Source: Trichoplax adhaerens (taxonomy: Eukaryota; Animalia; Placozoa). From it: a stretch of 64,000 nucleotides of DNA. Positions 1 through 18,900 of the stretch are shown here, piece by piece; position 1 is the stretch's first letter; every line of letters starts with the position of its first letter. The translations under genes were made by a program, and so were the position numbers. The DNA lies in the NCBI RefSeq assembly GCF_000150275.1, contig NW_002060960.1, forward strand, positions 248,001-312,000, written 5' to 3'. The notes below the pieces were generated by a model, which ran no database searches, had not been told where the DNA came from, and saw only the letters and a program-made list of their open reading frames with translations.

Positions 1-2740
1 TGATACAGAAGCAGAGACTTTTCATCCAGACGCTTCAGTAATTGGATCGTATCTTCTTGATTTTGTCTCCATAGACAGTAGATTGATTGAATAGGAATGG
101 GAATGGGGTTATAAACACCAAGCAATCGAATTAATTGACAATCTTTTTCTTCCATCTGACTTAAACTGAATTGAATGAGTGGACGGAGATCACATTCTTC
201 ATTCTCATCTTCTTCATCAATTTGTAACTTGTCTACAAGGTTTTTCCACTCGTTGACAGTCTTTAATTTCAGTCCAGCCATAATAGCAACTGCAATTGGT
301 AGATTTTGGTATATTTCAACAGCTTGTTTGACTACATTTTCAGAACTTAAGCGTTGGATAACCTCTACAGGCTGATATAGTGCTAAAATTTCCATGGATT
401 CATTTTGCGTTAACCCTGGCTGTGAATGAAACATATTGTAAGACAATTTATATCTTCTCTCTAAATGTAGTCTAACCTAACAACCCTACTAGTTGAAGAA
501 AGTTAATCTTAAGTCTGATACTTCATGTTTAGTTTAGTCTTGCTTTCAGGAGCAATAAATAAAGCATACATTACGATCTTTATAGATCATTAAGAAGTAA
601 TACGGCGAAAACGCTATCACCTGCACTATCCAGTATGAAATTAAGTGTATCGACAACGCTATTTAAATACACCAATGGATGACACTGTTATTAGGTGCTC
701 CTAAGCAAGGAATTTCTAATATTTAAAACGGGATATATTATATAAATCAATCCCAAGATTACATGGCCAAATTAATTGCATTGTTGAAATGAAACGAATT
801 TAATGGAAGTCCCACACGAAATTTCTACTATTCGAAAAGGATATACTAATTTATGTGCTAGAGGATATGGCAATATCAACCCAACTGTTGAGATTGAACA
901 AATTCAGTGGCAGAGCTAATTCCATGTTGTTATTTTAATCGTATCAATACTTACAGGTGATTGTAAACAAGTCCATGTCTCCTGTTTTTCATCGTCTATC
1001 CAAGGTGCTGTAATGACTGATTTCTTTGCAAACTGGATATACTGTAGACTGGATTCTTCTTGTACATCATCGAAGATAAATAGAGCTTGCGATTTATTCT
1101 TATTCGCTTAAAACAGCATGCAGCACGGTATTAAAATGCAATGCCGGAAAAGGATAAACATATTGCAAGAAAATCAAGACCAAAAATGGATAAGTACGTC
1201 CATAAGGATGCACATTGCACAGTCGTTGAACTCGTTGATGTAAAGATAGGAGCTGCATTACGAACTATAAATGAATGATTAACTACCTTGGAAATAACGG
1301 TTTAGGCGATCAACAACATCGTCTAATTTTTGAGGTAGATCAATGCCTTGGAGACCGAGTTCGAGGCATAACTTTTCCAAAATTAAAAATAACCGCTGAT
1401 TTTTAGCATTTCCTAAATAAACAAGACAGGAATGAACACATATCATGTTTAAATGTGGAAAAGTAAGCCGGCATGAAGATTGAATATAATCTCCTAGTTT
1501 TCCATAAGAATTTATCTTAATACTGGGTCGTAAACGTATCTAAAGTAAGGAGCTCTGGCTAGAAAAGCATGCCGGCTTAACGATTTAAAATAATTCACTC
1601 GTTCTCCATTAGAGATTATCCAAATGTAGGGTATATAATATATGCAAAGCAATGAGTTCTTGCTGTAAAAGTATGGCAGCATAAAGATTGAAAATAATCC
1701 GTTAGTTCTTCATTTGAATGAATCTAAATGCAAGGTCTAACATACGTATATCTAAAGTAAGGAGCTCTAGCTGGGAAACTATGCCGACATAACGATTAAA
1801 AATAATCCACTAGTTCACCATTCGTGTTTATTCAAATCGACTATCTCAGATATATCCAAGGCAAGGAGCTTTTGATAGCGATAATTGTAGGACTACACCA
1901 ATCCATGCTTTTCTAGCTTAACCATTTCTATTACAAACAAAATGATATTGCTTACCGATTGTGATCCAGTATACGCCATTTGGGTGAAAAGCTTTCTTTT
2001 GCTCTACTACTATTCTAACTGCTTGGCTTACTGCAACAGTTTTACCACTGCCTCGTTTGCCATGAACCCAAATGTGGCCTCCACACTGATCGATATCTTG
2101 TAATCGACTGCAGATGTTGTACAGGAAATTCTGCCTGATGATGCAGCGATTAGTTGGAACTTTCATAACATGTCGTAATAAATCTGTAACATGGAGAAAG
2201 TTTAATTGCAAACATTCTATGCACAATTAATGGATAGAAGACAGATATTCATGAAAAACTATTATAACAGCATGCAACGAGTAGGATGCTATAACGGCTC
2301 CTACTGTAAATTTGCATCTAACATGACTCAAAACTAATGGAAGGCATATATTCTGTTCAAGGAGTTAAAGGGACCGAGTTGCAACATACGGATCAAAGCT
2401 ACAGCGGTTCTTCTACTTCATGCATTGCAATTCAAAATGTTTTAGAAATAATCGATGAATCATTGTTTTCCTAATTACCACGAATGAATATCTGCCTAGT
2501 GTAAACTAATCTCTATTCCATCCTAACGAAAATATGTTTAGCATAAACATAGCAGCCTTAGCTACTCAAATAGCACGTAATACTGCCGATCTCTTAGCTA
2601 AATAGGACAATAAATACAATCAAAACAGTGCTCTTTTTTAAGGAATAATACATGTAGTAGTACTTTATTGATGCTGTTGAGGGGCTAACCTTGATATTCG
2701 TTGTTATTAGTCGGATTTTGATTCGATACAGACATGTTAC
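1..2740 (-). CDS. Apaf-1/CED-4-like NB-ARC (STAND) ATPase, partial (continues past left edge; 5' exons unresolved)
   Basis: Phase-consistent GT-AG exons 2690-2740, 1956-2183, 1287-1412, 955-1106, <1-419. Translation has Walker A (IWVHGKRGSGKT), NGVYWITIG (RNBS-A-like), Walker B (ALFIFDDV), GxP-like QNLPIAVAIMAG and a winged-helix segment (IQFSLSQM...LLGVY...IYCLW...LDEKSLL), in NB-ARC order. Possible further exons up to ~3730 could not be assembled cleanly. Confidence 0.85.
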
Positions 2741-5700
2741 CTATTGATTTAGTCAAGAAAAAATTCAAAATAAGAACTAGAACATTAGGATTAAAAAGAA
2801 CTAACAACACTAGTGAGATTCTAAATACTGTCGATACTTTGCAATTTTACGTCAATTGAAAGCAGCTAGAAAGATTTTTTCGTATCCTATACAATATCTT
2901 GAAAAACTGTATGTTAATACTCCTTGTAAGCTATATTACAAGCTGATTGCTAAAACATAATCAGCAGCAAAGCAGACTAGTACCCATACGAATTTCTTTT
3001 AAGAGCTAAGTAAGAGCAAGTCTTGTCTTCTTACTGAGGTTCAAATGAGCAAGAGCTGTCAATAATTATCCAATGAGACTAGAAACGACTTTAAAAAAAT
3101 CGTTGAAATTGGAATTGTTTGCCTTAGCTCTATCATCGCTTACTACAGTAAAACAAAAATCTACATTTGCAACTTAGCATTTACTCCATCCTGTTATACT
3201 GTAATTCTAACCTCCAGAAAAAGGATTCATTATTCACGTCATAAGAACTCAGCAATGCAAACAGCATAATATCTATCGTTTTGACTACGAAAAGTCGTTA
3301 TTGTAAGGATTATTACAGTATACAGTTTTAGAGAGTACAAAAATCCTTCCGAAATAAGCATCAAACTGTTAGAGTGTATTCTAACTTGGTATTGATGATA
3401 ATAACTGCCCTAATAAGTCCGTTACTTGTTTACTGATCCGCACGTAATTCTTTCTCCAACTTTACTATCCAATCATCATGGTAGACAGCGTAGCAATGAT
3501 GACTATTTGTAATGAACTCTATTCAATCTCTATGATATAATCGACTGATGCTGTAATCATTCTTATTATGATGAAAATATCCCATACTCCTCCGTTAGTA
3601 ATACAATATCTTACTTTGATTTGATGAAACTGGCATATGGAAAGCTCCACCATCAATTGATCATGATAGTCCTCCACCTGTAATCCTTCGCTAGCTCAAA
3701 TAAGCTCCAAGCGTGGTGGCTAAGCATAATTAAAAGAGGACAGTCTAAGCCTATCAGAATCGTTGATTTTGTTTAGTGAACACGTTTCAAATTATCATAT
3801 TTTAAAACTAATTATGAATTCATAACCATCATTCCCACATGCAACGCCCAATTTTGACTTTCTCCAATCCTGCATTAGGTTAGGAAAGCAAGGGCGTTGA
3901 TCTTATAGATGCCTTTGTTCTCAACTTTGTAAGTTTGTTGTTGGTCTCCACAGCTGCAGCATTCCGATTACTTCTTCAACAAACGCTTCAACATGTTACA
4001 AAATATTTTTACTCGATTGTAGTATAGCCCTGTTACGATGCGTAAGCTCGTCCAAATTATAATTATTTTTAAAAGGATACTTTTATATTATATGCACCAG
4101 GAGTTTCTGACGAGACTATAAAAGGCTGATGCCTGAAGATTCCTTTTTAGTTCGTTAGTCGGTTAGATAGTCAACTAGTTTTCAATTGATATTTAATTGT
4201 GAAGACTATAATCTTGGGTGCCAAGATTCCTTCAGTAATAAATGATAGTAAATCTCTGACTATCTCGTCTACATCATCTGTGACGCTATAATTATACCAT
4301 AGTATTCGGTTGTTGGAACTGAATTAGTTGGTGATATAGCTAATCTCGCCTCTTTAAGTTAGTAAGTGGCGTTCTCCGCAAGGATTGGCGTGTGTAGACT
4401 ACTTTGTCACTAGTGGTGTGTGACAAGCCCCAAATATATCGAAGATTAAGATTATTGGATTGTAGGAGAATCGATAAATTGTATGTAAGATTGTATATAG
4501 AGATCGTCCCGAGAAAGTCCTTGGTAGTACTTTATAATTAGGCGAACCTAGTATGCAGTAAGTAAAGTTGACAAGAAACTGCAATTCTCGTAAGCTTCTC
4601 GAGAAGACACTTTATCACATATATCAATCCTTGAACTAGCACAAATTTACTTGCTCCCAAGTCATAACGCACCATGAATAGGGTAAATTAGGAAATCAAT
4701 TTAGAGATTAACTGTCTCTAACGTTAGCGTTTTAAATATTATTAAACACCCTATATATGTATATAGAGATCTCCCGAAATAGTCCTTCGTAGTACAGCAC
4801 ATAAATCAAATGCAAATGCTCAAAGTAACTAACAGTAAATTGACATAGTTTTGCGGCTAGTGAGTTCAAAGAAACAATCGATTTCGTGGCAAATTACCCT
4901 ATCTCTAGTCTAGGCAGATGAGTTATTCTAGTCCAATCACTTTAATCTACCTCTCTATTTAGCATAAAATGAGATATAGATACACTATACTGAAATAAAT
5001 ATTAAGAAATACGCAATCCATTTTAGAATCGAATTATCGATATTATAATGATTTCACTTGGATAATAGCCAACGGATCAGTTTAAGCTTCAGATAAATAA
5101 AATAATATCTACGAGTAAAATGGAGATATGAAGGAGGATCGTAGTCATTTACAGGAAACTACTTCTTATAGAATAATTGTCAACAAGCTATCATCAAAGT
5201 AGATGATATAATTTCTTACTGTAATTTACTCTATCACTAAGTGATTAAAAATGTTAACATTCTAATTGATTATATGCGTATGTTACTCCATTTCTATGTC
5301 ACTCGCATTCATAAATCCAACCTATAAAGGAGATCTTAACTGATACTTCATTTATTTGATTGAATCCAGGAAGATATGATAGTAAGCTAAGATTCACTTA
5401 CCTCCTACATGATCGTGAGCTTAAATCATCTCATATGAGATAGATAGATTCCGATTAAGCGTCACTGTAGCTGGTTACTATTAGTTAAATATTATTTTCC
5501 TTTATCATCTCTTTAGAGTATTTACATTTAAAAATAGTAGTATTAGTATAGTATCTTAACCTTTAAATATCGATACATTCTGCAATAGCTAGTTGCTTCG
5601 GTCGATAAACTACAAGTCTATTTAATTATTAACAAAATCGTTTAGGTCCTAGAATTTTTATCACAGTTTTAAAATTTTTCTTCGTTATTAATCATCGTAT

Positions 5701-8586
5701 ATATTCTACTTAGGTGGATAATGCTATAAAATTGCATTACCTAGACTTAACGATTGTATTCAAGAGAAATGCGAATATTAAAAGACGAAACTATAGATTC
5801 TCGTATTTCTTGTTGGAGTTCTGTTCCATTGACTCTATGCCTTTAGACTTTGTTCGTATTAATGAACATCGATCGATGTTACTGTATATGATTTCAGTAT
5901 ATATAGTATTATGTTCAGAAACAATATAGCAGTTGCTAGGGTACTCAAGGAAAGTGCTGATTTTTTGTTGTACTGTAGATGCAGTTTGATATTTTAATAG
6001 AGAAGAAAATCTTTGCAGAACCTTTGAAAGATTAATTATTATTAGTTATCCTTGTAGGGAAGATTCGATTTATTATAGAAACAATGATAAGATATTTGCA
6101 AATCAGAGCACTTGGAAAGTTCAGTTTCATCGATATGTTATAAGGCAAGTTTTGAATTTTAGCTATTTATCGCTGCTTATCAATTATTTATTTAAAGGGT
6201 CTATGTCTATATCTATAACTATATCTATATCCATACTGATCAGAATAATCCGAAATAAATGTAATAATTCGTGTAAATGCAAAAATCAGATTAAGTCATA
6301 TGCATATCATATACTCAGTGCGAAGTAACAGGTGATAATGTAAAGTAAAAAGTATAGATATATACAGACTGCATACTGTGCAGTACACGGAGTAGAATGA
6401 GGGTGGTTCCACTAGTCTATATTATGATAGAATAGCTGATCAATTTACTGTATTTGCTTATGAGCTTAGTTTAAGTTATTTTCACTACTCCGTAGCATAA
6501 CTCCATATATTCGTATGTATGTATAATCTATATTGAACATTTTATATTGTGTAAATCTGTTTACATTCTTATTAAATTATATCATAGAACTACATTAGTA
6601 TAAACATAGAAGTAAGATATTCTTATTAGTCATTCGCGTTATAAATATTATCTCCTGCTGTGCTTCTAGTAATATAACGTCGATATTTGTGCATCTATCG
6701 AGTGAATTAGTCCTAGTAGCAAGTTACAAGGTAATCTTGCACGCTTTATAATCTATTCTACTTTATCATGACTATTCGACTAGTCACGTCGTTACACACG
6801 CTATAACTGTGCACAATTTTCTATTCACACACCTAGCAAGAAAGATTACTTTTTCACCAGTTATCCTCTTGTCATTTCTTACAATTATGGTAATCACACC
6901 ATCTTCCGAAACATCACAGGAGATCCAGGAAGGTTATGTTTCAGCAATATTTGCACTTTGTGCCCGAAAGTGCATGGAATGTTCCTTTATGAAAACAAAA
7001 GTTAAAACTGAGTGATGATTCATTTCACTGTTTACGCAGCAAAGATGCCATCTAAAGATATAAAAGGAGATGAAGAAGTTCAAGTTACTAATTATAATTT
7101 TATCACCACGTCCTGTTTAACACTCTGGGCATTACGAATCAAGAAAGAACTACAATTAGCTAGTTGTAAGTGGAAACTATCTTGATTTATAGAATTTTAT
7201 GATTCACGAGTCCATCATTTTCCTAGCTGATGATTAAGCATTTCATCTATGTCATAAGCCATTCATTTTATTTTACATTGCTTTTCTTGAGATAGAATAT
7301 CATGATCCTTTTTGTACACCCCATGGTAACATAAAAACACATCATCCTCCAATAAATGATATATTTCCCAGATTTTAAACTGCATCACTTTCGTCTTTAA
7401 AGTTAAATTTCATACTGTATATTAGATCACAGCCGTAATCAAATTGCACTGAGACGGTAGCAGTATTTGGCTGTTTGACTAGTAACGATAAAGTTTCATT
7501 TTAATTTTTCTGTATATATTTATAATTAGTGCCTATGATTGCAAAAAATATCGTCATCGGGATTACAAACGCAATTTGCATACCGTACTATACGATATTC
7601 TTTAATGTTTATTTATCCCATTTATAATACGAAATGCCTTCTTTTTCAATAAATAATTAGTTTTCTAGGATTTAAACGATCATCCTTTCGCCTTCAAAGT
7701 TAGCTTTATACGGAGTATTATGTCAAAATGCTAACCAAACAGCATCGAAATTAAAGCAGTATTTTACCATTCTGATACTAATGTGCTCCTAATGCAGAAA
7801 ATTTATTCTAATTTTTTCCCTTTCATGTTTATGCATAATAACTAAATATAATACTAAATTGACTTAAGATTCTCAATAATAGTAACAGTAATATTATAGA
7901 TGGCTTTTATAGGCGCAATTTGCAGCACATACTTTACGATATTGTCTAGTCTCAGTCTTTGGCTAAGGCAACTCGATTTTACGGTACTAAAAAATTTCTT
8001 TGGAAACAGGCATTAAAATTATTCCTAGAGGATGTTGAATGATATTGAAAGATATACATATTTAATTAGATATCATGTTATTAACACCTATCAATATCAG
8101 CACTACTCCAATTTGTCATTGAAACTTTCTATGATAAATGAATCTACGTCGATTTAGTTATTTTATTTTCTTATTATTCTAATTACATTTTCTTACTTTG
8201 ATGAATGCTAAATTGTCTAACGCATTGATAAATTTAGTTTTAATTCTATCTAAGCAAGCATCAATATCAGAATTAGATGAAGATATCTTTAATGTTATAA
8301 CCTGTTAATACGTATTATCCTGGTAAAAATGATGTTCGTGTTTGAACTGAGATTTGCTTTCTACCTGCCACAATATTAAATTTTGTTATTGCCCTGGCAA
8401 AAATGTCTATCAATACAAAGCATTAAGCTATCAATTTCGTTTAAGATTCTAAATGATCATGCCATCTATATAACGAGACGTTAGTAAAGTCTTTCTTTCC
8501 ATGCCTTTAGGCAAAAATGATATCAAAATAAAAGTATCTCATTCATTTACTCTTGTTACTTTGATATTACCTTTCAGGCTGGCAAT

Positions 8587-9732
8587 ATGAGTCTTTGTAT
8601 TAAAGGAATTGCTTCTGAATTAGCTCAGGAGAACACTTCGATGATGCGATCGCTTGATCTTGTACATGAAGGCTGGCAGAATCCATCGACTGTCAGCAAT
8701 AATGAATTGATACCTGGTAGTCGGTTAATCAAAAAATACAATGGAACCATAGAATTACTTCCTAAAACACCAGGAGAGATTATCGGAGAGCAAATCGTAA
8801 GACCTGTCTTAGATGCAACTCTCTCTGTTGCAAAATCAACCTTGAACATTTTAACGCAAGGTTTCAACTTGTTGGATCGTGGAATGAGTAAAATGTTTCA
8901 AATACTACCTGCAGCACAGGCTACTGATGTAGGACAGATTGCTTATTTTGAAGGTAGCTGTCCAGAAGGATGGAAAAAGTACGTCCAAGCTGAAGGTCGG
9001 TTTGTCATTGCTGCTGGATCATTTCGTGGTCGAAGTTATGACGGTAGAGTAGAATCTGCAAGTTATAGTACTGGTCAAAAAGGTGGAGAAATTAAACATA
9101 GATCTACTATCAATGAAATGCCTCATCATAAGCATGATTTTCGAGTTAACAAGAATGGGGCTATTGGCGAAGGTGTCTTACTAGGAAATACACCTAATGA
9201 GGGCCCTGGATACTCTGGCGGTGGCTATTATCATCTTGGAATTAGCAGTGCTCGTATGAGGTATGCTGGAGGCAATCGACCTCATAACAACATGCCTCCT
9301 TATATTGCTCTTCAAGCATGCCAAAAAATCAAGGATATTGAGCTATCTGGATATGCTCAATCTTCTGATTTAACTACTACAGCTCAGCAAACTCAATCCA
9401 CTTTGGCTGTTTTGAAAAAGACTATTGAATCTCATCAAAGGAGCTCTAATGCTACTGTCCTTGCAGTTAGCTCTAGGGTTGCAAAACTGCAAAAAGATCT
9501 TGAAAGCTGCAAGCGAAATGTTACTTGGATAACAGCCAATCTAAAACAAGCTCAAAGCAAGGATTCTCTGCAGACAGAAATGATCTCTTTCCGCGATCGT
9601 TTTTCCCTCTTAGATGATCAAGTTAAAAGTAATCGAAAATTCTCTGATACTTTATTATCGGTCATTGATCAATTGAAAAGCGAAATTGCTGCTTTAAAAA
9701 GAACATCAGAATATGAAAGAAGAAGAAGATGA
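8587..9732 (+). CDS. Intronless 381-aa protein: N-terminal leader + phage tail-collar/gp10-gp12 C-terminal-like domain + C-terminal coiled coil
   Basis: Single long ORF. aa ~115-247 (nt ~8929-9327) carry VGQIAYFEGSCPEGW...GRFVIAAG...GQKGGEIKHRSTINEMPHHKH...AGGNRPHNNMPPYIAL, the motif series of tail-collar/microcystin-dependent-like/baseplate fibre proteins. aa ~260-378 show heptad-like L/I/V periodicity. AATAAA at ~9742 and ~9767. Confidence 0.8.
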   Translation: MSLCIKGIASELAQENTSMMRSLDLVHEGWQNPSTVSNNELIPGSRLIKKYNGTIELLPKTPGEIIGEQIVRPVLDATLSVAKSTLNILTQGFNLLDRGMSKMFQILPAAQATDVGQIAYFEGSCPEGWKKYVQAEGRFVIAAGSFRGRSYDGRVESASYSTGQKGGEIKHRSTINEMPHHKHDFRVNKNGAIGEGVLLGNTPNEGPGYSGGGYYHLGISSARMRYAGGNRPHNNMPPYIALQACQKIKDIELSGYAQSSDLTTTAQQTQSTLAVLKKTIESHQRSSNATVLAVSSRVAKLQKDLESCKRNVTWITANLKQAQSKDSLQTEMISFRDRFSLLDDQVKSNRKFSDTLLSVIDQLKSEIAALKRTSEYERRRR

Positions 9733-10046
9733 AAGGAAAAAAATAAAATTGGCCGTTACTGACTTCAATAAACTCATATATTAGCCCATCTTACCAATTA
9801 AATAATCCAGATAATGGCGATAGGTGTAGCTGGTATCCTCTTCTCTAATAAGTAGAGTAATCATCACCATTGAGATGAATATAGCAAGTGAAGTATAGAA
9901 AAGAATGTCATTTTTGAATTAGCTTAAAATTATTGGATGGTAAATTCCATACATTAACGGAACAGGCCATCGTTTTATCTAGGCTAGCATTAGCTCTCCA
10001 GTCGATTTAAACCATTTTATCTTGTCCATAATCTTGACGGAAGATT

Positions 10047-10385
10047 ATTACTTGTTGTTAACCTAGGCAAGTTTATCTTTAATAATATTTAAAACTTTCA
10101 ATTGATTTACTATTGATGGCATGTAAATTTTCTAACTTATCGTTTACTTAGGCAAGTATATCTTTTATAATTCATATGTAAAACCTTCAGTTAATTCATT
10201 ATTATCGGTATACAGATTTTTATTTATCATTGACTTAGCCAAGTTTATCGTCTATTTAATAAATAAAATCTTAAATTAATTCATTATTGGTAGCATACAG
10301 ATTTTTATTTATCGTTGACTTGGGCAAGTTTATTCTGTATTAACATGTAGAAATCTTGAATTAATTCATTATGGATAGCATGCCT
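10047..10385. repeat. Degenerate tandem repeat, ~4 copies of ~85 bp
   Basis: Recurrent TTATCGTTGACTTAGGCAAGTTTATC...TTAATTCATTATTGGTAGCATACAGATTTT at ~10050, 10135, 10225, 10308. Confidence 0.7.
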
Positions 10386-11818
10386 CAATGAAAGCTTATG
10401 AGCAGTTTTCAATATCGAAATAGTTCTACTATGTGTAAATTGATAGGAAATTGTGTCGATGTTTGTTCATTACAAAAAGGGGATCCATCAAGGAATCCAT
10501 TTGTTATCGATAGCTCTTTACTGTCCTAAGATTGATTGATTGATTGATTAATTTATTACCTTACCATGCAATAAACTATATGTTAATTAGCTCAATCTTA
10601 GATATTTCGGTTTCCCTCATTTATGATCTAAAATGGTAGTGATTGATGTCAAAGGTATCAAAGCCTATCAGTAATCGTAGTTATAACATCACCATTTTAA
10701 TGCATTGCTCATTTTCATTAACAACTTATCTCCAATATACGGCAAGAGGAATACCGTCTAGGCCATTATTCCCAACTATTTTTTCTAGTTTTGACACATT
10801 GCGATTGGATCGATAGAGTTAAAGTTGACTGGTGCATAGTCTAGCGGCCATAGAAATAAAACTTTAGCCATGTTATACCAGGCTACGACAAACTGTGATT
10901 GGCTAGGTGGAATTAAAGTTTAGCTGTACCTTACGTAGAAATAATATTTTAACCATATTTTAAACCTCTCCATGATAATCAATACGACAGTGCCAACAGC
11001 ATCTACTTTTATATAAACTCTATTGATCATATTACGTCCTCTATTTAAACCAGAAGACGTAAATATGGGAATAAGGCTTTTATATTAACAGCAACATATC
11101 TTGGTTTACCACATCAAACGAACACCAGAGTCGTTAACAAGATAGAGTATAACTCATAGCTTCTCTAATTTATACCAATCATAGAATTGATGAAAGAAAT
11201 ACATATTAAAAAATAAAGGCTATCTCAAAAATGGGAGCTATATAGATGTCAAAAGCTAATTAGGCTATAAAAAGGAAACTAGCAAGTCTATATCTTATTG
11301 AAGTCATTTTGAATTACTTAGTAGAATTGATGAAAGGACGAAAACAAAAAAAGCTTCCTTCTATCTAGTCTAGGAGCTTTTGGAGTTTCAACATGCTATT
11401 GGATAGTTAAAATGAGCTAATATGAGCTATATCCTCGTTGAAAGTAGAAATAGAATAGTTGTATGGAATGAGGCAAAATTAGTAGATTCAATGTTTTGTA
11501 GAATTACTTGATTCCATTCTTAAGCTACGGAAATGATTGCTGTCTAGAGGAAAAAGGAACTTGCTAGTCTACTACGATATCGATTGCCTTGCCTGGGTAG
11601 GTCAACTAACTTGCTATGTTAATCACTATGTGATATCATGGAAACGAATGAGTGTTCTGGATTGATCTTGTCTTTTCCTACTGTCAGCTTTTCTACTCCC
11701 TATCTTAATTCTTAAATTTCATTTTTAAAGGCTTTGTCAACTTGGCCAGTGTTCGAGTATCTTCCTTATCCGATTTAGTTTCTTCCTTTTCCGATTTGAT
11801 TTCTATCTCATCAGTAGA

Positions 11819-15002: not shown

Positions 15003-15928
15003 TTAAAGGTTACCATGTGTTGATAAAGTGGCAGAATCGGTAGGGTGGATTTGTAATTCTGCTTCGTAAACTAATTGGCTAATTTTAAAGCGTATAATAC
15101 TACGAGTTCTTTGTGGAAAATGGCCAGTGACGGTGGCGATCGATTCGAAAAATTTTAACATTTCTGTTTCTCCTTCGTAGAAGTTAATTTCTTCTGCTTT
15201 TGTATCGTTCACTTCTACAGTATCTGTTTGCACGCCTCGATCATTTGTTTTAACTGCTATTTTTCTCTTTCTAGTACCACATAATGATGGAATTACTTTC
15301 TGAGGTGCTATCTCCATGGTTGGCTCTTCTTTATCGCTCTGATCAGATACTAGTACATCCCATAATGTAGCACTTTCCTCAGTTTGGCCGTCATCCGAAT
15401 TGGAAATTCTACTACTGAAATTATAAATACATTCCTTTCTTTAAATTTAAATTTTAATAATATTAATTACTTGGCCACATTCACTTACTCTCAACTATGA
15501 ATCTGCTTAATTAATTCACAGAATTTGAGTATTACCCTCTTGGTTTTATATGTGATGAAATAAATTGCATTTCCTCGCCATATTTATAAGACATGGATAT
15601 GGGGTTACTTTGATCGGCGCTTGGTTCAGAATTTTTAGGCGAAGTGAGTTTGGCATTTTTACGAAAAGAATCGCGTAGATTTTTCCAATTCTTTCTTGCT
15701 AATTCTCCTGTTAGAAACTAGGGCTTAGATTAAAATGTTTCTTAGAAACTGCATTTACAATCATTAAAATTGCTTACCATGGATACTTAATGCTTCCCCG
15801 ATAAAGCCCCATATTTTATCCTTTTTTTTAACATCAGAAAAACCCTCATGATTGGTATCATATAGAATAGGATGTCTTTCAACTAAATGGATTAGCCTTT
15901 TCTTTTCCTCGTTTGTTAACTTTTGCAT
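15003..15928 (-). CDS. MADF (Myb/SANT-like) domain + BESS-like motif transcription factor, 244 aa
   Basis: Exons 15778-15928, 15536-15707, 15003-15414 (735 nt, phases consistent). MADF signature LIHLVERHPILYDTNHEGFSDVKKKDKIW...ARKNWKNLRDSFRK...YKYGEEMQFI. C-terminal BESS-like FFESIATVTGHFPQRTRSIIRFKISQLVYEAEL. Confidence 0.88.
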
Positions 15929-18900
15929 TATTTAATTCCAATGCAGCTTGCAAACGCACCTTCCGATAAAAATGGTATAGATATGAGAGCATATCAAAAG
16001 ATTCCGATATAATTTAACCGTATTTAAATTTTACAACTAAGCAACTACATACGCTGTGAAACGATTTGTATTACTGTCAAATAGATAAAACCCAGTAGGA
16101 ATAAATTGTGTAATTAATCTAATCCCTGTAAGGTTAACTATGAACACCACCCCTTTGGCCATTTTACCATAACTGCAATCTATTTTGGTTTAGCTTATTA
16201 TTATATTTATAAGTATTGACAATTTACTGTAGAAGGGAAATAGATCGACGCTTGTAGATATAATTAAATTCTATTGAAAGTTATGACTAGTCCGATTACC
16301 AAAGATATTTATATTGCCTTCTAGTCAGTAAAAACGCCATAAAACAAATTGCTTGAACTAATAAATATAATTGCTTGAAATTACTAATGAATATCCACGT
16401 TAGCCAACTTACCGTCGCTGGAATTCTATTAGGATTTCAGTTGAGGACTTTACCAGAGTCAGCGGTTAAGAAATAATAGAGAAATGTTAGAATTGCTTAT
16501 GATACTTTCTATAATTTAATACAACTTCTAGTTTACCCTGCCAATCTACCGTACAATTTCATCCCGGAATACAGATAGCCGACACAGAGATAATTAAGCT
16601 TGTGGGCAAATGTCTATAGCTGAAAGGTCATTACTGATAAAATGGAAAATTGAAAGTTTTTAACTAATGTCAATCTCTTTCAAATGCACCAAACGAAAAT
16701 TGTTTATTACTATTAATCTTATTTTAATTATGGAAATGTTTAAAATTAAAATAATTGCGTATGTAAAGGTACAGATATTAAAACTAGTCCCAAGTACTAG
16801 TACTAGAACCCTTCTGATTTTGAATATTGACATTAAGCATTAATTAGATAAAGAAACGCCGCTAAAATGCCATCCACATTTTTGGATCAAAGCTGTCGCG
16901 GTAGTGAATTAACGGTAAATTATATTTGTATAGTGAGTTAAAATTTTAAATCAATGTAAAAGTAATCATCTAGGGCCTAAGGATAACTGTACTTACAATT
17001 TATAACTCCCATGTGATTCTCAATGTCAATAAATGACAAAGATGAAAGCATGGCTAATGTGTTAGAATAGCAAAACATCACATTTAATGACATTATTTCG
17101 TCTTGATGAGGTGGTTGCTATACAATAATTTCATCCAGCAACAGTAATCATTCTAACTTCCAAATGTCTAAATTATCAATATATTACGATCAGTATCAAG
17201 TTAATTTTATTTCCGGAAAAAGATAACATTGAGATGGCAACTAGCCTAAAATGCAAAATCATCAATAATAATCAGCTCAAATCGGGTTAATATTTATCTA
17301 GTACTCGATAATGAATAATTGGCAAGCTGAAATTTAAAGGGCAACATTGGAGACATCTAATAATCTGAAAAGCTATCTTAATATTGAATAACTACCAAAA
17401 TAACAGCCGGTCCTCTTATACGAGTTTTATTGATTATCTGTACTATAATTTATTTAACCGACTAGATACCATTAGCGTAATTACTTATGTGCCTGAAATA
17501 CAGCTATCGTAGAAATCATATCAGATTATATGATTTCAGCCAGATAATAATTAATCATGGCTTTGCCGTAAATTAGCCGGCACATCGAAACATGTTTTGA
17601 CGTTAATTTTCATGCCAACCAACGCAATCATGATTATTTCACCGGTATGATAATTTATAATTATCTGATAATTGTCATTAACCAGCTGCATATAAAGACA
17701 GTACTCACACGAAATGCTATAATCATAAACATGAGCTGAAAGAGTATTTATTTTAAAGGGATTTAAATTTGTCTTAATTTAAGCGACAAGATGGAAAGAT
17801 GGTGATAGTCGATTAGGATCTCGCTTATGGAGTCGAATATTATCTTGTCATTTAGAACTGCAATCGTAAATAATAGCCAATCGATCATTTTACCGGCAAG
17901 GGATTTAAATGCTTGCAAGATTTATAGAATGCTAAAATCATGACTACAGAGCCAACTTAAATACAATTGCACCACCTACAATGAATTTTAATTATTGCTT
18001 TTCTACAATTTCAGTCAGAAATAGTGGAAAAATGGCAATTAGTCTAACAGGCTTAAAATCATTTTTGTCAAGTTCAATAACGCCATTTTTATCGATTGAT
18101 CATGGATAATTATCCCTAAAATTATTATCTGACAGCAAGATGCGAAGATTGTTCCAGGTTTAAAGTACTAAAATCATGGACCTTGATTTCATCTACTGTT
18201 ATCATTAGAATGTACATTTTACTAATATGGATCAATAGTAATGTCAAGAAATTAAGTAGGAAAAAGCTTATTTGCAAATAAAAGTTGGAGATAAAGTAGC
18301 GCTTAGAAAAATAATTAATACGAGAAATAAATTTCCATGTTATTTCCTGTTTGTCAATTGAAAAATTAGCGTATGTTGGTAGCGGTTAGTTCCTAGAATT
18401 ATTTTCAATCAGCACAACATAAAGATTGTTACAGGTCTAAAGTGCTACAATGATAAGCCTCCATTTCTTCCATCATTGTCACTAGAATAGGTATTGTACT
18501 TACACCTGTCGAAGGTTTGGTTCTAGTTATGTCAAGAAATTGAGTTGAATCAAGCTTATTTGCTAATCAAAATTAAGAATAAAGTAGTGCTTAATAATTC
18601 ATGTATAGAAGCAGAAATAAATTTTCGTGTTATGGTTGCTATTGACTGAAGAATTTGGCGCATACTGTATGTCGGAAGTGGTTTGTAATGCCATATCCAA
18701 GGTAAATACACAAAGAGCGATGCTATTTCCTTAAAACTATTTATAATCGTAAAAATCGTCTGTTGATTTCAGTAGCTGGAAATTTCTTGAATACTTTGAT
18801 ATCCAATGGAGCAATCATCGATTCTATTTAGATCAAACTACGAGTGGTAAGGAATGATAAAAGGTTTTACGCTGGCATAATACATCCAGTGTCAATCAAT

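What the first reader, a model, noticed from the sequence alone, without database searches (positions are those of the whole stretch)
8587..9732. Phage tail-collar/fibre-like gene embedded in an animal chromosome (HGT candidate)
Seen: the only long intronless ORF in an intron-rich neighbourhood. It carries the motif chain G.I..F...CP.GW / GRF...AG / G..GGE..H.....EMP.H.H / GG..PHNNMPPY.AL. Knowledge: this chain typifies phage tail-collar, T4 gp10/gp12 C-terminal and bacterial microcystin-dependent-like proteins, which are trimeric, use HxH for metal binding and often bind bacterial surfaces. Inference: acquired from a phage or bacterium and fused to a ~120-aa coiled coil, giving a collectin-like stalk-plus-head design that could act as a microbial-recognition protein.
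Basis: partly seen in the sequence, partly recalled or inferred. Interest (0 to 1): 0.8.

Follow-up and report, generated by a model that had tools for sequence, protein, structure and literature searches.

The report
Bacterial tail-fibre-like gene domesticated by placozoans
A simple marine animal (probably Trichoplax) carries, expresses and conserves a single gene of bacterial origin that encodes a three-stranded protein with a head like the receptor-binding tip of a phage tail fibre; this is a clean case of bacterium-to-animal gene transfer whose function is still unknown.

Summary
Window 8587-9732 (+) is a 381-aa ORF, by far the longest in the window, and it carries all four motifs. It scores just above Pfam's threshold for Gp10_C (T4 gp10/gp12-type fibre-tip head).

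It is a real nuclear gene, not contamination:
- The flanks are intron-split NB-ARC and MADF genes.
- The locus is held by runs of 7 studies under 2 species labels.
- An RNA contig splices a 5'UTR exon (about 6632-7165) to 8578 across a GT..AG intron.

A 51%-identical ortholog lies in a diverged relative, with the same splice acceptor just before the ATG. dN/dS is about 0.24 overall and 0.09-0.19 in the head.

All nearest relatives whose context I could read are bacterial, on chromosomes or mobile elements. One is a roughly 0.8-Mb, 30%-GC 'Cytophagales' MAG. Known phages and plasmids hold only remote, head-only matches.

These bacterial relatives already have the N-terminal module, head and coiled coil. 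The coil was therefore inherited, not fused on in the animal. What the animal copies lack is the C-terminal membrane anchor. They also have no signal peptide, which argues against a secreted collectin-like protein.

A homotrimer is predicted (0.81 against control 0.00). Ligand binding, possibly to bacterial surfaces, is inference only. The scan had not found this on other DNA.

The parts
6632..7165 (+). Non-coding first exon (5'UTR). The 5' limit is only the end of an RNA contig. It holds 9 upstream ATGs, and its 5' part overlaps a dispersed genomic repeat.
   Evidence: In run X19 a 2350-nt contig joins 6632-7165 to 8578-10393. In the main frame, TAG at 7157-7159 lies two codons before the junction, so the exon adds no coding sequence. 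ATG count. Repeat.
7166..8577 (+). Spliceosomal intron in the 5'UTR (1412 nt, donor GTAAGT, acceptor tttcAG).
   Evidence: The joint 7165->8578 skips 1412 nt with GT..AG ends; sequence. The acceptor and the 9 nt before the ATG are conserved in the relative's copy, while the sequence upstream of the acceptor does not align.
8578..9772 (+). Second exon, holding the whole coding sequence and the two nearest AATAAA signals (9742, 9767). The RNA contig runs on to 10393, so the true 3' end is not settled.
8587..9732 (+). Coding sequence, 381 aa, single copy in the genome.
   Evidence: No indels inside it in four runs, while six indels lie in the flanks.
8704..8904 (+). N-terminal conserved module (aa 40-106): a beta-hairpin plus a 45-residue helix, shared with the closest bacterial homologs (motif PGxRL...KTPxExxGE..RP..D). 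No Pfam family matches it.
   Evidence: Alignment; model with strands 46-49 and 55-58 and helix 62-106; HMMER matches starting at aa 31-43.
8905..9342 (+). Head domain (aa 107-252) of the T4 gp10/gp12 fibre-tip type (Pfam Gp10_C).
   Evidence: Pfam 28.3 bits against cut-off 27. VIA-align Z 4.9 to the T4 gp12 receptor-binding domain and 4.6 to the Pa223 tail fibre. In the all-against-48,161-chain search only 11 chains reached Z>=2, and 10 of them are phage or injection-system fibre or baseplate proteins or the C24 protein. dN/dS 0.09-0.19.
9127..9135 (+). HxH motif (H181-K182-H183), the presumed metal site on the three-fold axis.
   Evidence: Invariant in alignment A2 and nearly invariant in A3. 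Aligned to the HTH of the Pa223 tail fibre. Residues 181-186 lie in the predicted trimer interface of all three copies. Metal binding itself is inferred from what is known of T4 gp12.
9280..9303 (+). PHNNMPPY motif (aa 232-239), the most conserved stretch of the family.
   Evidence: the pattern used to find 363 genomic relatives; interface.
9361..9726 (+). C-terminal coiled coil (aa 259-380) ending in a basic tail (RRRR). It takes the place of the coil plus membrane anchor of the bacterial relatives.
   Evidence: Helices 259-329 and 339-380. Interface residues spaced 3-4 apart from 258 to 323. No TM-like segment, unlike P0003/4/6/7/8/9/10/12/13.

Best explanation
This is a nuclear, transcribed and selectively maintained animal gene that came from a bacterium, most likely from a gene carried on a mobile element of a low-GC, host-associated bacterium. 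Transfer happened before two placozoan lineages split.

The transferred unit was a whole gene for a membrane-anchored fibre-like protein with four parts: a short N-terminal module, a phage-fibre-tip head (T4 gp10/gp12 type, HxH motif), a coiled coil and a C-terminal anchor. In the animal it gained a non-coding first exon (partly repeat-derived) and a 5'UTR intron. Compared with its bacterial relatives it lacks the membrane anchor, which is replaced by a basic tail.

The product is predicted to be a soluble homotrimer. Three heads pack round a three-fold axis that carries the HxH histidines, and a three-stranded coiled coil follows. With no signal peptide it most probably works inside the cell.

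By analogy with fibre tips, which bind surface glycans or LPS, I infer that it binds a ligand multivalently, possibly on ingested or resident bacteria.

Shown: gene structure, integration, transcription, purifying selection, bacterial affinity and domain family. Predicted: the trimer. Inferred only: metal binding, ligand, cellular location and physiological role (about 0.3 for a role in dealing with bacteria).
For: Integration:
- The flanks hold intron-split NB-ARC exons (3-2226, minus strand) and MADF exons (15535-15931, minus strand).
- The gene is single copy on a 1.23-Mb scaffold.
- 19 runs from 7 studies and 2 species labels hold at least half of the sampled words of the 3-kb stretch.
- DNA contigs of another species label cover the ORF and both flanks.

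Transcription:
- An RNA contig has a GT..AG intron removed (7166-8577).
- A contig from a library on record as RNA lies within the ORF (X20).

Age and selection:
- A 51%-identical ortholog lies on a 34%-GC contig whose neighbouring ECH and DSBA genes match this genome's C1391 pair at 61% and 72%, in the same arrangement.
- The acceptor site just before the ATG is shared.
- dN/dS is 0.24 overall and 0.09-0.19 in the head.
- In organism B the ORF has about 3 times fewer listed differences than its flanks, and no indels.

Bacterial origin:
- 2656 HMMER hits.
- The ten nearest whose context or label I could read are all bacterial.
- In the tree, window + ortholog (SH-aLRT 95) nest inside a 43-row clade (96) of uncultured bacterial proteins plus a 'Cytophagales' MAG of about 0.8 Mb and 30% GC.
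- No neighbouring bacterial gene came along with it.

Architecture was inherited; anchor loss.

Family.

Trimer: ipSAE 0.81 against a best control of 0.00; runs agree in at least 74% of contacts; partner pLDDT at least 69. The mark was reached by 21 of 30 solved homo-pairs and 0 of 23 solved single chains. The calibration used two copies, and a pass may come from memory of solved fibre trimers.
Against: - The Pfam score is barely above threshold, and fold-match Z values are low (4.1-4.9). That is expected for one chain taken out of an intertwined trimer, but it is weak on its own.
- The 5'UTR carries 9 upstream ATGs. One opens a 49-codon uORF that overlaps the start codon, so translation may be poor. 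I found no protein-level evidence.
- A spliced antisense transcript covers the ORF, so some of the RNA signal is not the mRNA.
- The contigs used are unstranded; only the splice dinucleotides give the strand.
- Absence from other animals was not tested exhaustively. The protein libraries carry almost no taxonomy.
- dS is saturated (1.2-2.5), so the dN/dS values are rough.
- The tree is a 'quick' search on 179 columns, with many unresolved forks.
- The donor lineage is not identified.
- Nothing shows what the protein binds or where it sits in the cell.
Confidence: 0.78

Rival explanations
1. The donor was a phage, not a bacterium: a tail-fibre or baseplate gene passed from a virion or prophage straight into the animal germ line.
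For: The head family is typical of phage fibres and baseplates. Some close relatives lie beside mobile-element genes: a tyrosine recombinase, a primase-helicase and a family A polymerase in L003; HTH_17 and many small ORFs in L008; Tn3 and ParA in L011.
Against: tblastn against 50,697 phage records gives 4 hits, all head-only at 30-35% identity. None of the close relatives sits in a tail or baseplate gene module. They carry C-terminal membrane anchors, and some carry signal peptides, which is not the design of virion fibres. Two lie among housekeeping genes of bacterial chromosomes.
Confidence: 0.12
2. The protein is a secreted, collectin-like pattern-recognition molecule.
For: A trimeric stalk-plus-head design is predicted. 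Fibre-tip heads of this family bind bacterial surfaces in phages (established knowledge of T4 gp12).
Against: There is no signal peptide or hydrophobic segment in either animal copy. The upstream exon is non-coding, with an in-frame TAG two codons before the junction, so no hidden leader exists. The N-terminus (M-S/N-L-C) is shared with bacterial homologs from residue 1.
Confidence: 0.1
3. It is a transcribed but functionless relic of a transfer. The ORF survives by chance and the RNA is a by-product of the antisense or neighbouring transcription units.
For: There are nine upstream ATGs and an overlapping uORF. A spliced antisense RNA is present. There is no protein evidence.
Against: The ORF is intact in two lineages that differ at 49% of residues, with dN/dS about 0.24 and the head most conserved. 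Four runs show no indels in the ORF but six in the flanks. The family's invariant residues are all kept.
Confidence: 0.06
4. It is bacterial contamination or a chimeric assembly.
For: The coding sequence has no intron and its best homologs are bacterial. Placozoans harbour intracellular bacteria (PMC3641634, PMC6879607).
Against: It has a spliceosomal 5'UTR intron and a spliced transcript. The flanks are animal genes. The same junctions occur in independent assemblies from 7 studies. No other bacterial gene is in the window. A relative's ortholog lies beside animal ECH and DSBA genes.
Confidence: 0.01
5. It is an ancient eukaryotic gene inherited vertically, or the transfer went from animal to bacteria.
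For: Absence from other eukaryotes was not shown exhaustively.
Against: The family is very large in bacteria and phages. The animal pair is nested inside bacterial diversity, not the reverse. Nothing eukaryotic appeared among the 20 top relatives checked for context or label.
Confidence: 0.03

Closest known systems
C-terminal head domain of bacteriophage T4 gp10 / gp12 (Pfam PF21939 Gp10_C; PDB 1ocy, 2fkk)
   Same: Profile match above threshold. HxH and P-H-N motifs are conserved. The fold search returns gp12, gp10, gp11 and the gp37 tip. A predicted trimer places the histidines at the interface.
   Different: The gene is not part of a virion or of a tail gene module. The head is followed by a long alpha-helical coiled coil rather than sitting at the C-terminal tip of a beta-structured fibre. 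It is encoded in an animal nucleus. Sequence identity is only about 15-20%.
Pseudomonas phage Pa223 tail fibre (PDB 9nxk) and the C24 protein of Bizionia argentinensis (PDB 6ov6)
   Same: These are the best Foldseek and profile matches (E 0.008-0.02; hmmsearch E 5.5e-4 over the HxH...PHN stretch).
   Different: The matches are weak (Z about 4, 60-105 residues aligned). Those proteins have neither the N-terminal module nor the coiled coil of this one.
Uncharacterised bacterial membrane-anchored 'N-module + Gp10_C head + coiled coil' proteins (P0003, P0004, P0006, P0008/P0009 and kin)
   Same: Same domain order and 33-42% identity over up to 325 residues. They form the clade in which the animal genes nest.
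   Different: The bacterial proteins end in a hydrophobic anchor, and some begin with a signal or lipoprotein peptide. The animal proteins have neither and end in a basic tail. None of these proteins has a known function.
Collectins / ficolins (animal trimeric stalk-and-head lectins)
   Same: Overall design only: a trimerising stalk and a globular head that could bind multivalently.
   Different: There is no homology, no collagen stalk, no C-type lectin or fibrinogen head and no signal peptide. The resemblance is analogy, recalled from general knowledge.
Other domesticated bacterial genes in animals (for example tick and mite Dae amidases; placozoan GH23 lysozyme discussed in PMC12855814)
   Same: A single bacterial gene integrated among animal genes, with eukaryotic transcript features acquired and purifying selection.
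   Different: Those are enzymes with a demonstrable activity. This one is a non-enzymatic fibre-type binding module, and I found no paper describing such a transfer.

Membership tests
Pfam PF21939 Gp10_C (T4 gp10/gp12-type fibre-tip head) | Profile HMM score above the curated gathering threshold | tested here: met
   28.3 bits against 27 for the window protein, aa 129-242 on profile positions 29-133 of 139. 30.5 bits for the ortholog P0002. The margin is narrow.
Pfam PF21939 Gp10_C (T4 gp10/gp12-type fibre-tip head) | Conserved HxH (the metal ligands in T4 gp12) and the downstream P-H-N motif | tested here: met
   H181, H183, H233 and N235 are invariant or nearly invariant and align to the HTH...THN of the Pa223 fibre. 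Metal binding itself was not tested.
Pfam PF21939 Gp10_C (T4 gp10/gp12-type fibre-tip head) | Shared three-dimensional fold | tested here: inconclusive
   Z is 4.1-4.9, below the level that is convincing on its own. However, 10 of the only 11 chains with Z>=2 among 48,161 are phage or injection-system fibre or baseplate proteins or C24.
Pfam PF21939 Gp10_C (T4 gp10/gp12-type fibre-tip head) | Homotrimer | tested here: met
   Prediction only: 0.81 against a best control of 0.00, at least 74% contact agreement, pLDDT at least 69. The pass may reflect memory of solved fibre trimers.
Phage tail or baseplate structural protein (functional class) | Encoded in a tail or baseplate gene module of a phage, prophage or contractile injection system | tested here: not met
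   The window has animal flanks. The nearest bacterial relatives lie beside housekeeping or plasmid- and transposon-type genes, not tail genes.
Pfam PF07484 Collar (phage tail-collar domain, MdpB-like) | Profile HMM match | tested here: not met
   No Collar hit at E<=1. Collar co-occurs with Gp10_C only in more distant Atlas clusters.
Horizontally transferred bacterial gene in an animal genome | Physical linkage to host genes in independent data | tested here: met
Horizontally transferred bacterial gene in an animal genome | Nested within donor-domain sequences in a phylogeny | tested here: met
   The pair (95) lies inside a bacterial clade (96). This was a quick tree without an outgroup, and no AU test was run.
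Horizontally transferred bacterial gene in an animal genome | Eukaryotic gene features and expression | tested here: met
   GT..AG 5'UTR intron and a spliced RNA contig. AATAAA signals after the stop.
Horizontally transferred bacterial gene in an animal genome | Absent from other animal lineages | tested here: inconclusive
   Nothing eukaryotic appeared among the 20 nearest relatives inspected. The libraries lack taxonomy, and other animal genomes were not searched directly.
Collectin-like secreted pattern-recognition proteins | Signal peptide, collagen-like stalk and lectin head | tested here: not met
   No hydrophobic N-terminus, no collagen or lectin domain, and no coding upstream exon.

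The most novel reading that the evidence does not exclude
Placozoans turned a bacterial, membrane-anchored protein with a phage-fibre head into a soluble intracellular trimer. This trimer recognises or tethers bacteria: prey taken up by the animal, or the resident intracellular symbionts. That would make it an animal microbe-sensing protein descended from a fibre-tip receptor-binding domain, a class not described so far.
Probability: 0.2. Interest if true: 0.85.

Novelty: new member of a known kind. Interest (0 to 1): 0.6.

Why it matters
Well-documented bacterium-to-animal gene transfers are few, especially in early-branching animals, and most involve enzymes. This case passes the usual tests: linkage to host genes, an intron, a spliced transcript, an ortholog in a second lineage, purifying selection and bacterial nesting. 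It also involves a binding module of the kind phages use to recognise bacterial surfaces.

The case shows the steps of domestication unusually clearly. The gene gained a repeat-derived non-coding first exon and a 5'UTR intron, it lacks the bacterial membrane anchor, and the whole bacterial domain order is kept.

If the protein binds bacteria, it would offer a handle on how an animal without conventional immune tissues deals with food bacteria and endosymbionts. It also draws attention to an uncharacterised family of bacterial anchored head-and-coil proteins found in reduced-genome, host-associated bacteria.

Tried and rejected
- **Contamination or chimera:** rejected.
- **Coding upstream exon or hidden signal peptide:** rejected. 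In the main frame a TAG sits two codons before the exon junction, and the ATG at 7045 runs out of frame into exon 2.
- **Synteny between the window and the relative's contig L001:** none beyond the ORF. The relative's neighbours map to another scaffold (C1391), where I found no remnant of the gene. This means a relocation. It is unremarkable given that about 25% of genes are translocated or inverted between Trichoplax and Hoilungia (PMC6067683).
- **Word-indexed protein searches:** found only the gene, its ortholog and two bacterial proteins. These are uninformative blanks.
- **phmmer against PDB with the single sequence:** found only coiled-coil noise.
- **Profile against PDB:** also hit a 'conserved membrane protein' (8qox) through the coil and anchor region, with compositional bias. 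I set this aside.
- **Whole-protein Foldseek and VIA lists:** dominated by long-helix matches to viral spike stalks, which I regard as trivial.
- **L003 (contig of the best hit):** it looked possibly eukaryotic, with four RRM genes and a 158-aa S15. NCBIfam shows a bacterial S15, a bacterial RRM regulator and mobile-element genes.
- **Order of the 'Cytophagales' MAG:** 121 genomes sampled. Only that MAG has a close match, so the distribution is patchy.
- **Literature searches for this gene or for tail-collar or Gp10_C genes in animals:** nothing found.
- **tRNA-like origin of the exon-1 repeat:** none found.
Full report
**1. Observation**

The ORF at 8587-9732 (+) is real: ATG to TGA, 381 aa. 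It is more than twice as long as any other ORF in the 64-kb window, where the next longest is 183 aa. They fall on the invariant or nearly invariant columns of alignments with bacterial homologs.

Pfam gives one hit above its curated threshold. This is Gp10_C (PF21939), at 28.3 bits against 27, covering aa 129-242. PHROGs gives weak hits to tail-fibre and tail-protein families. The Pfam 'Collar' model does not hit.

**2. It is an animal gene, not contamination**

- The window is 31-35% GC throughout, and the ORF is 39% GC with a GC3 of 26%.
- On the minus strand upstream there are exon-sized pieces matching different parts of the NB-ARC profile (3-476 and 1921-2226).
- Downstream there are two exons of a MADF domain (15535-15931).
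- The gene is single copy in a 105.6-Mb, 1414-contig assembly and lies on a 1.23-Mb scaffold.
- The assembly size and a largest scaffold over 12.4 Mb fit the Trichoplax adhaerens reference as described in PMC6067683, where 70.3 Mb equals 66.5% of the assembly and the largest scaffolds are 2.4-13.2 Mb.
- 19 public runs from 7 studies under two species labels hold at least half of the sampled words of a 3-kb stretch containing the ORF and its flanks.
- DNA contigs of the second label cover every bin of 5000-10900. One 6.2-kb contig spans 8145 to beyond 10900.

**3. Gene structure and transcription**

In run X19 one 2350-nt contig joins 6632-7165 directly to 8578-10393. It skips 1412 nt whose ends are GT..AG, with donor GTAAGT and acceptor tttcAG. 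The genome has only one copy, so this is a spliced RNA.

In the frame of the ORF a TAG lies two codons before the junction. The ATG at 7045 is out of frame and stops at about 8601-8603. The first exon is therefore a 5'UTR, and the whole coding sequence lies in exon 2.

No spliced protein model was needed. I sent no joined exon sequence to any search or fold tool. The only join was inside a script, to count ATGs in exon 1 plus the 9 nt before the start codon; the count was nine.

A library recorded as RNA (X20, second species label) has a 323-nt contig inside the ORF. AATAAA signals follow the stop at 9742 and 9767. The contig runs on to 10393, so the 3' end is not settled.

Positions 6603-6920 belong to a dispersed repeat with at least 40 copies at 70-75% identity. 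Part of the first exon, and possibly the promoter, is therefore repeat-derived.

Run X14 shows five joints with CT..AC ends, at about 6984-7931, 8024-8300, 8362-8567, 8712-8801 and 9845-9952. This is a spliced antisense transcript running over the ORF. The contigs are unstranded, so RNA coverage alone cannot be credited to the mRNA. Only the GT..AG joint can.

**4. An ortholog in a second lineage, and selection**

The only close homolog in the 5.8-billion-protein index is P0002: 400 aa, 51% identity, on a 5.6-kb, 34%-GC contig.

That contig also carries an enoyl-CoA hydratase exon and a DSBA-domain exon. Their best matches in this genome lie together on scaffold C1391, in the same order and orientation, at 61% and 72% identity. 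The contig therefore comes from a clearly diverged relative.

In this genome nothing resembling the gene lies next to that pair, so the gene sits at different places in the two lineages.

Nucleotide similarity between the two copies begins exactly at the splice acceptor. The AG, the next nine bases and the ATG align, and the sequence upstream of the AG does not. The 5'UTR intron was therefore probably already present in their common ancestor.

| Region | dN/dS (NG86) | dN/dS (YN00) | aa identity |
|---|---|---|---|
| Whole protein | 0.24 | failed | 51% |
| N-terminal part | 0.17 | failed | 51% |
| Head | 0.19 | 0.09 | 67% |
| Coiled coil | 0.34 | 0.79 | 32% |

Synonymous sites are saturated, so these values are rough.

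Within and between the two near-identical species labels, the ORF shows 2-6 substitutions and no indel. These include N16S, H180Y and A368T, none at a conserved position. All six listed indels lie in the intron or flanks.

**5. Relatives**

An exhaustive HMMER search of 1.84 billion representatives gave 2656 hits at E<=1e-3. The best are P0003-P0010 (E 6e-48 to 2e-27, 33-42% identity), and several of them align over far more than the head (for example aa 31-356).

I read the genomic context of P0003-P0009 and P0035. All are prokaryotic, with dense genes and no introns:

- P0008 and P0009 each sit beside a long SSF/HD-domain gene. P0008 also lies near ATP synthase, YicC and MiaA.
- P0003 lies between bacterial S15 and RRM-regulator genes and a block with a tyrosine recombinase, a primase-helicase and a family A polymerase.
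- P0006 is near ParA and a Tn3 transposase.
- P0005 is near PD-(D/E)XK and toxin-antitoxin-like genes.
- P0004 lies among many small ORFs.
- P0007 is near UvrC and ShlB.
- P0035 is one of a tandem pair, beside an ankyrin-repeat gene.

P0008 belongs to a MAG labelled Cytophagales, with about 0.8 Mb and 30% GC. Among 121 sampled genomes of its order, only that MAG has a close match.

Ten further top hits are all metagenomic. The one that is named is a Myxococcota MAG.

In a maximum-likelihood tree (73 rows, 179 columns, quick search), the window protein and P0002 pair with SH-aLRT 95. They sit inside a 43-row clade (96) made of these uncultured proteins and the MAG. Named Alpha- and Gammaproteobacteria, Bacteroidota, Elusimicrobiota and others fall outside it.

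Known phage genomes and plasmids contain only head-only matches at about 30-35% identity. No gene neighbouring any of the bacterial relatives has a trace in the window.

**6. What was transferred and what changed**

The closest bacterial proteins share four things with the animal protein:

- the start (M-S-L);
- a conserved module (PGxRL...KTPxExxGE..RP..D, aa about 40-75) followed by a helix;
- the head;
- a long C-terminal coiled coil.

The coiled coil is therefore ancestral, not a post-transfer fusion.

Nearly all the bacterial relatives I scanned have a hydrophobic segment after the coil, and some have an N-terminal signal or lipoprotein-like peptide. The two animal proteins have no hydrophobic segment at all. 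They end in basic tails...EYERRRR and a K-rich tail. So the animal version is a soluble, anchorless form of a bacterial membrane-anchored protein.

**7. Structure**

The AlphaFold model of the full protein has a mean pLDDT of 72 and these parts:

- disordered residues 1-36;
- a hairpin at 46-58;
- a helix at 62-106;
- a mostly beta head at 110-250;
- helices at 259-329 and 339-380.

The head aligns to the T4 gp12 receptor-binding domain (Z 4.9, 74 residues, rmsd 3.5), the Pa223 tail fibre (Z 4.6) and the C24 protein (Z 4.6).

A head-only model (pLDDT 75) was compared with all 48,161 PDB representatives. Only 11 chains reached Z>=2. Ten are phage or injection-system fibre or baseplate proteins (Pa223 fibre, T4 gp12, gp37 tip, gp10, gp11, a Klebsiella phage baseplate protein, a Photorhabdus injection-system fibre, a cyanophage fibre) or C24. 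The Z values are low, as expected for one chain of an intertwined trimer. The exclusivity of the list agrees with the sequence evidence.

A profile of 100 homologs hits the Pa223 fibre over the HxH...PHN stretch at E 5.5e-4.

Three copies of aa 60-330 are predicted to assemble:

- ipSAE 0.81 in each of three runs, against a best control of 0.00;
- at least 74% of contacts shared between runs;
- partner pLDDT at least 69.

The mark was reached by 21 of 30 solved homo-pairs and 0 of 23 solved single chains. The calibration used two copies, and the pass may come from memory of solved fibre trimers. The interface includes residues 137-146, 160-186 (with H181 and H183), 219-244 (PHNNMPPY), and positions spaced 3-4 apart from 258 to 323, which is the pattern of a coiled coil.

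**8. Mechanism**

| Status | What |
|---|---|
| Shown | An integrated, spliced, conserved gene of bacterial ancestry that encodes a Gp10_C-type head flanked by helices |
| Predicted | A homotrimer with the histidines on the axis |
| Inferred from T4 gp12 (established knowledge) | A metal ion held by the HxH histidines; a head that binds a surface ligand such as LPS or another glycan |
| Inferred from lack of export signals | An intracellular location |

My best guess, at about 0.3, is a multivalent binder that acts on bacteria taken up or housed by the animal. Placozoans feed on microbes and carry intracellular bacteria (PMC3641634, PMC6879607). Nothing here tests this.

The uORF-rich leader and the antisense RNA suggest tight or low translation.

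**9. Known or new**

I found no paper on this gene, nor on any Gp10_C or tail-collar-type gene acquired by an animal. A compendium of metazoan transfers cites Trichoplax only in its reference list, in the main text I could search. The rusticalin case (PMC6339383) concerns a different, peptidase-type gene.

First-stage notes list six other bacterial-type transfer candidates elsewhere in this genome. I did not test them, and they did not shape this reading.

The finding is a new, well-supported example of a known phenomenon. It has an unusual cargo and clear domestication steps.

**10. Limits**

- All read evidence comes from contigs, not raw reads, so there are no transcript ends, strand or expression levels.
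- The organism names are coded.
- The donor is unnamed.
- Absence from other animals is not established.

Noticed in passing
window 6595-10393, minus strand: A spliced antisense transcript lies over the tail-fibre-like ORF. Run X14 has five joints with CT..AC ends (introns at about 6984-7931, 8024-8300, 8362-8567, 8712-8801 and 9845-9952). No long minus-strand ORF is present. It may be a non-coding RNA or upstream exons of the minus-strand NB-ARC gene.
   Followed up: partly
window 6603-6920: A dispersed repeat with at least 40 copies (94 candidates) across the genome at 70-75% identity, with a 189-nt core and a version of about 320 nt. It forms the 5' part of the gene's non-coding first exon. 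No tRNA-like part was found.
   Followed up: partly
window 7045-7165 plus 8578-8603: An upstream ORF of about 49 codons starts in exon 1, crosses the splice junction out of frame and ends just after the main ATG. It is one of nine upstream ATGs.
   Followed up: partly
window 10042-10381: A tandem array of about four 85-nt units (74-90% identical), downstream of the gene and within the stretch covered by RNA contigs.
   Followed up: no
window 3-2226, minus strand: Exon pieces of an NB-ARC (APAF-1/NLR-type) ATPase gene. The P-loop exon is at 1921-2226 and a later part of the domain at 3-476. The gene runs off the window's start.
   Followed up: partly
window 15006-15931, minus strand: A MADF (Myb/SANT-like) DNA-binding domain split over two exons (15767-15931 and 15535-15717). 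A further open segment lies at 15006-15440.
   Followed up: partly
window 9124: A C>T difference in runs X19 and X9 changes H180 to Y, next to the conserved H181-x-H183. The ortholog has S at this position, so it is probably neutral.
   Followed up: yes
L097:4664-7140: In a bacterial MAG, two tandem paralogs combine a He_PIG Ig-like domain with the Gp10_C-type head and a membrane anchor, next to an ankyrin-repeat gene.
   Followed up: no
L006 / L017 / L099 (genome G001): The nearest named relative sits in a MAG labelled Cytophagales, of only about 0.8 Mb and about 30% GC. That size and composition are typical of obligate intracellular symbionts. In it and in a second metagenomic contig (L007) the gene lies just downstream of a long SSF/HD-domain gene (one intervening gene on L007).
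   Followed up: partly
G000:C1391:626741-629828: The enoyl-CoA hydratase and DSBA-domain gene pair is conserved in order and orientation with the relative's contig L001. Here the tail-fibre-like gene is missing from the adjacent position, so the gene has moved between lineages.
   Followed up: yes
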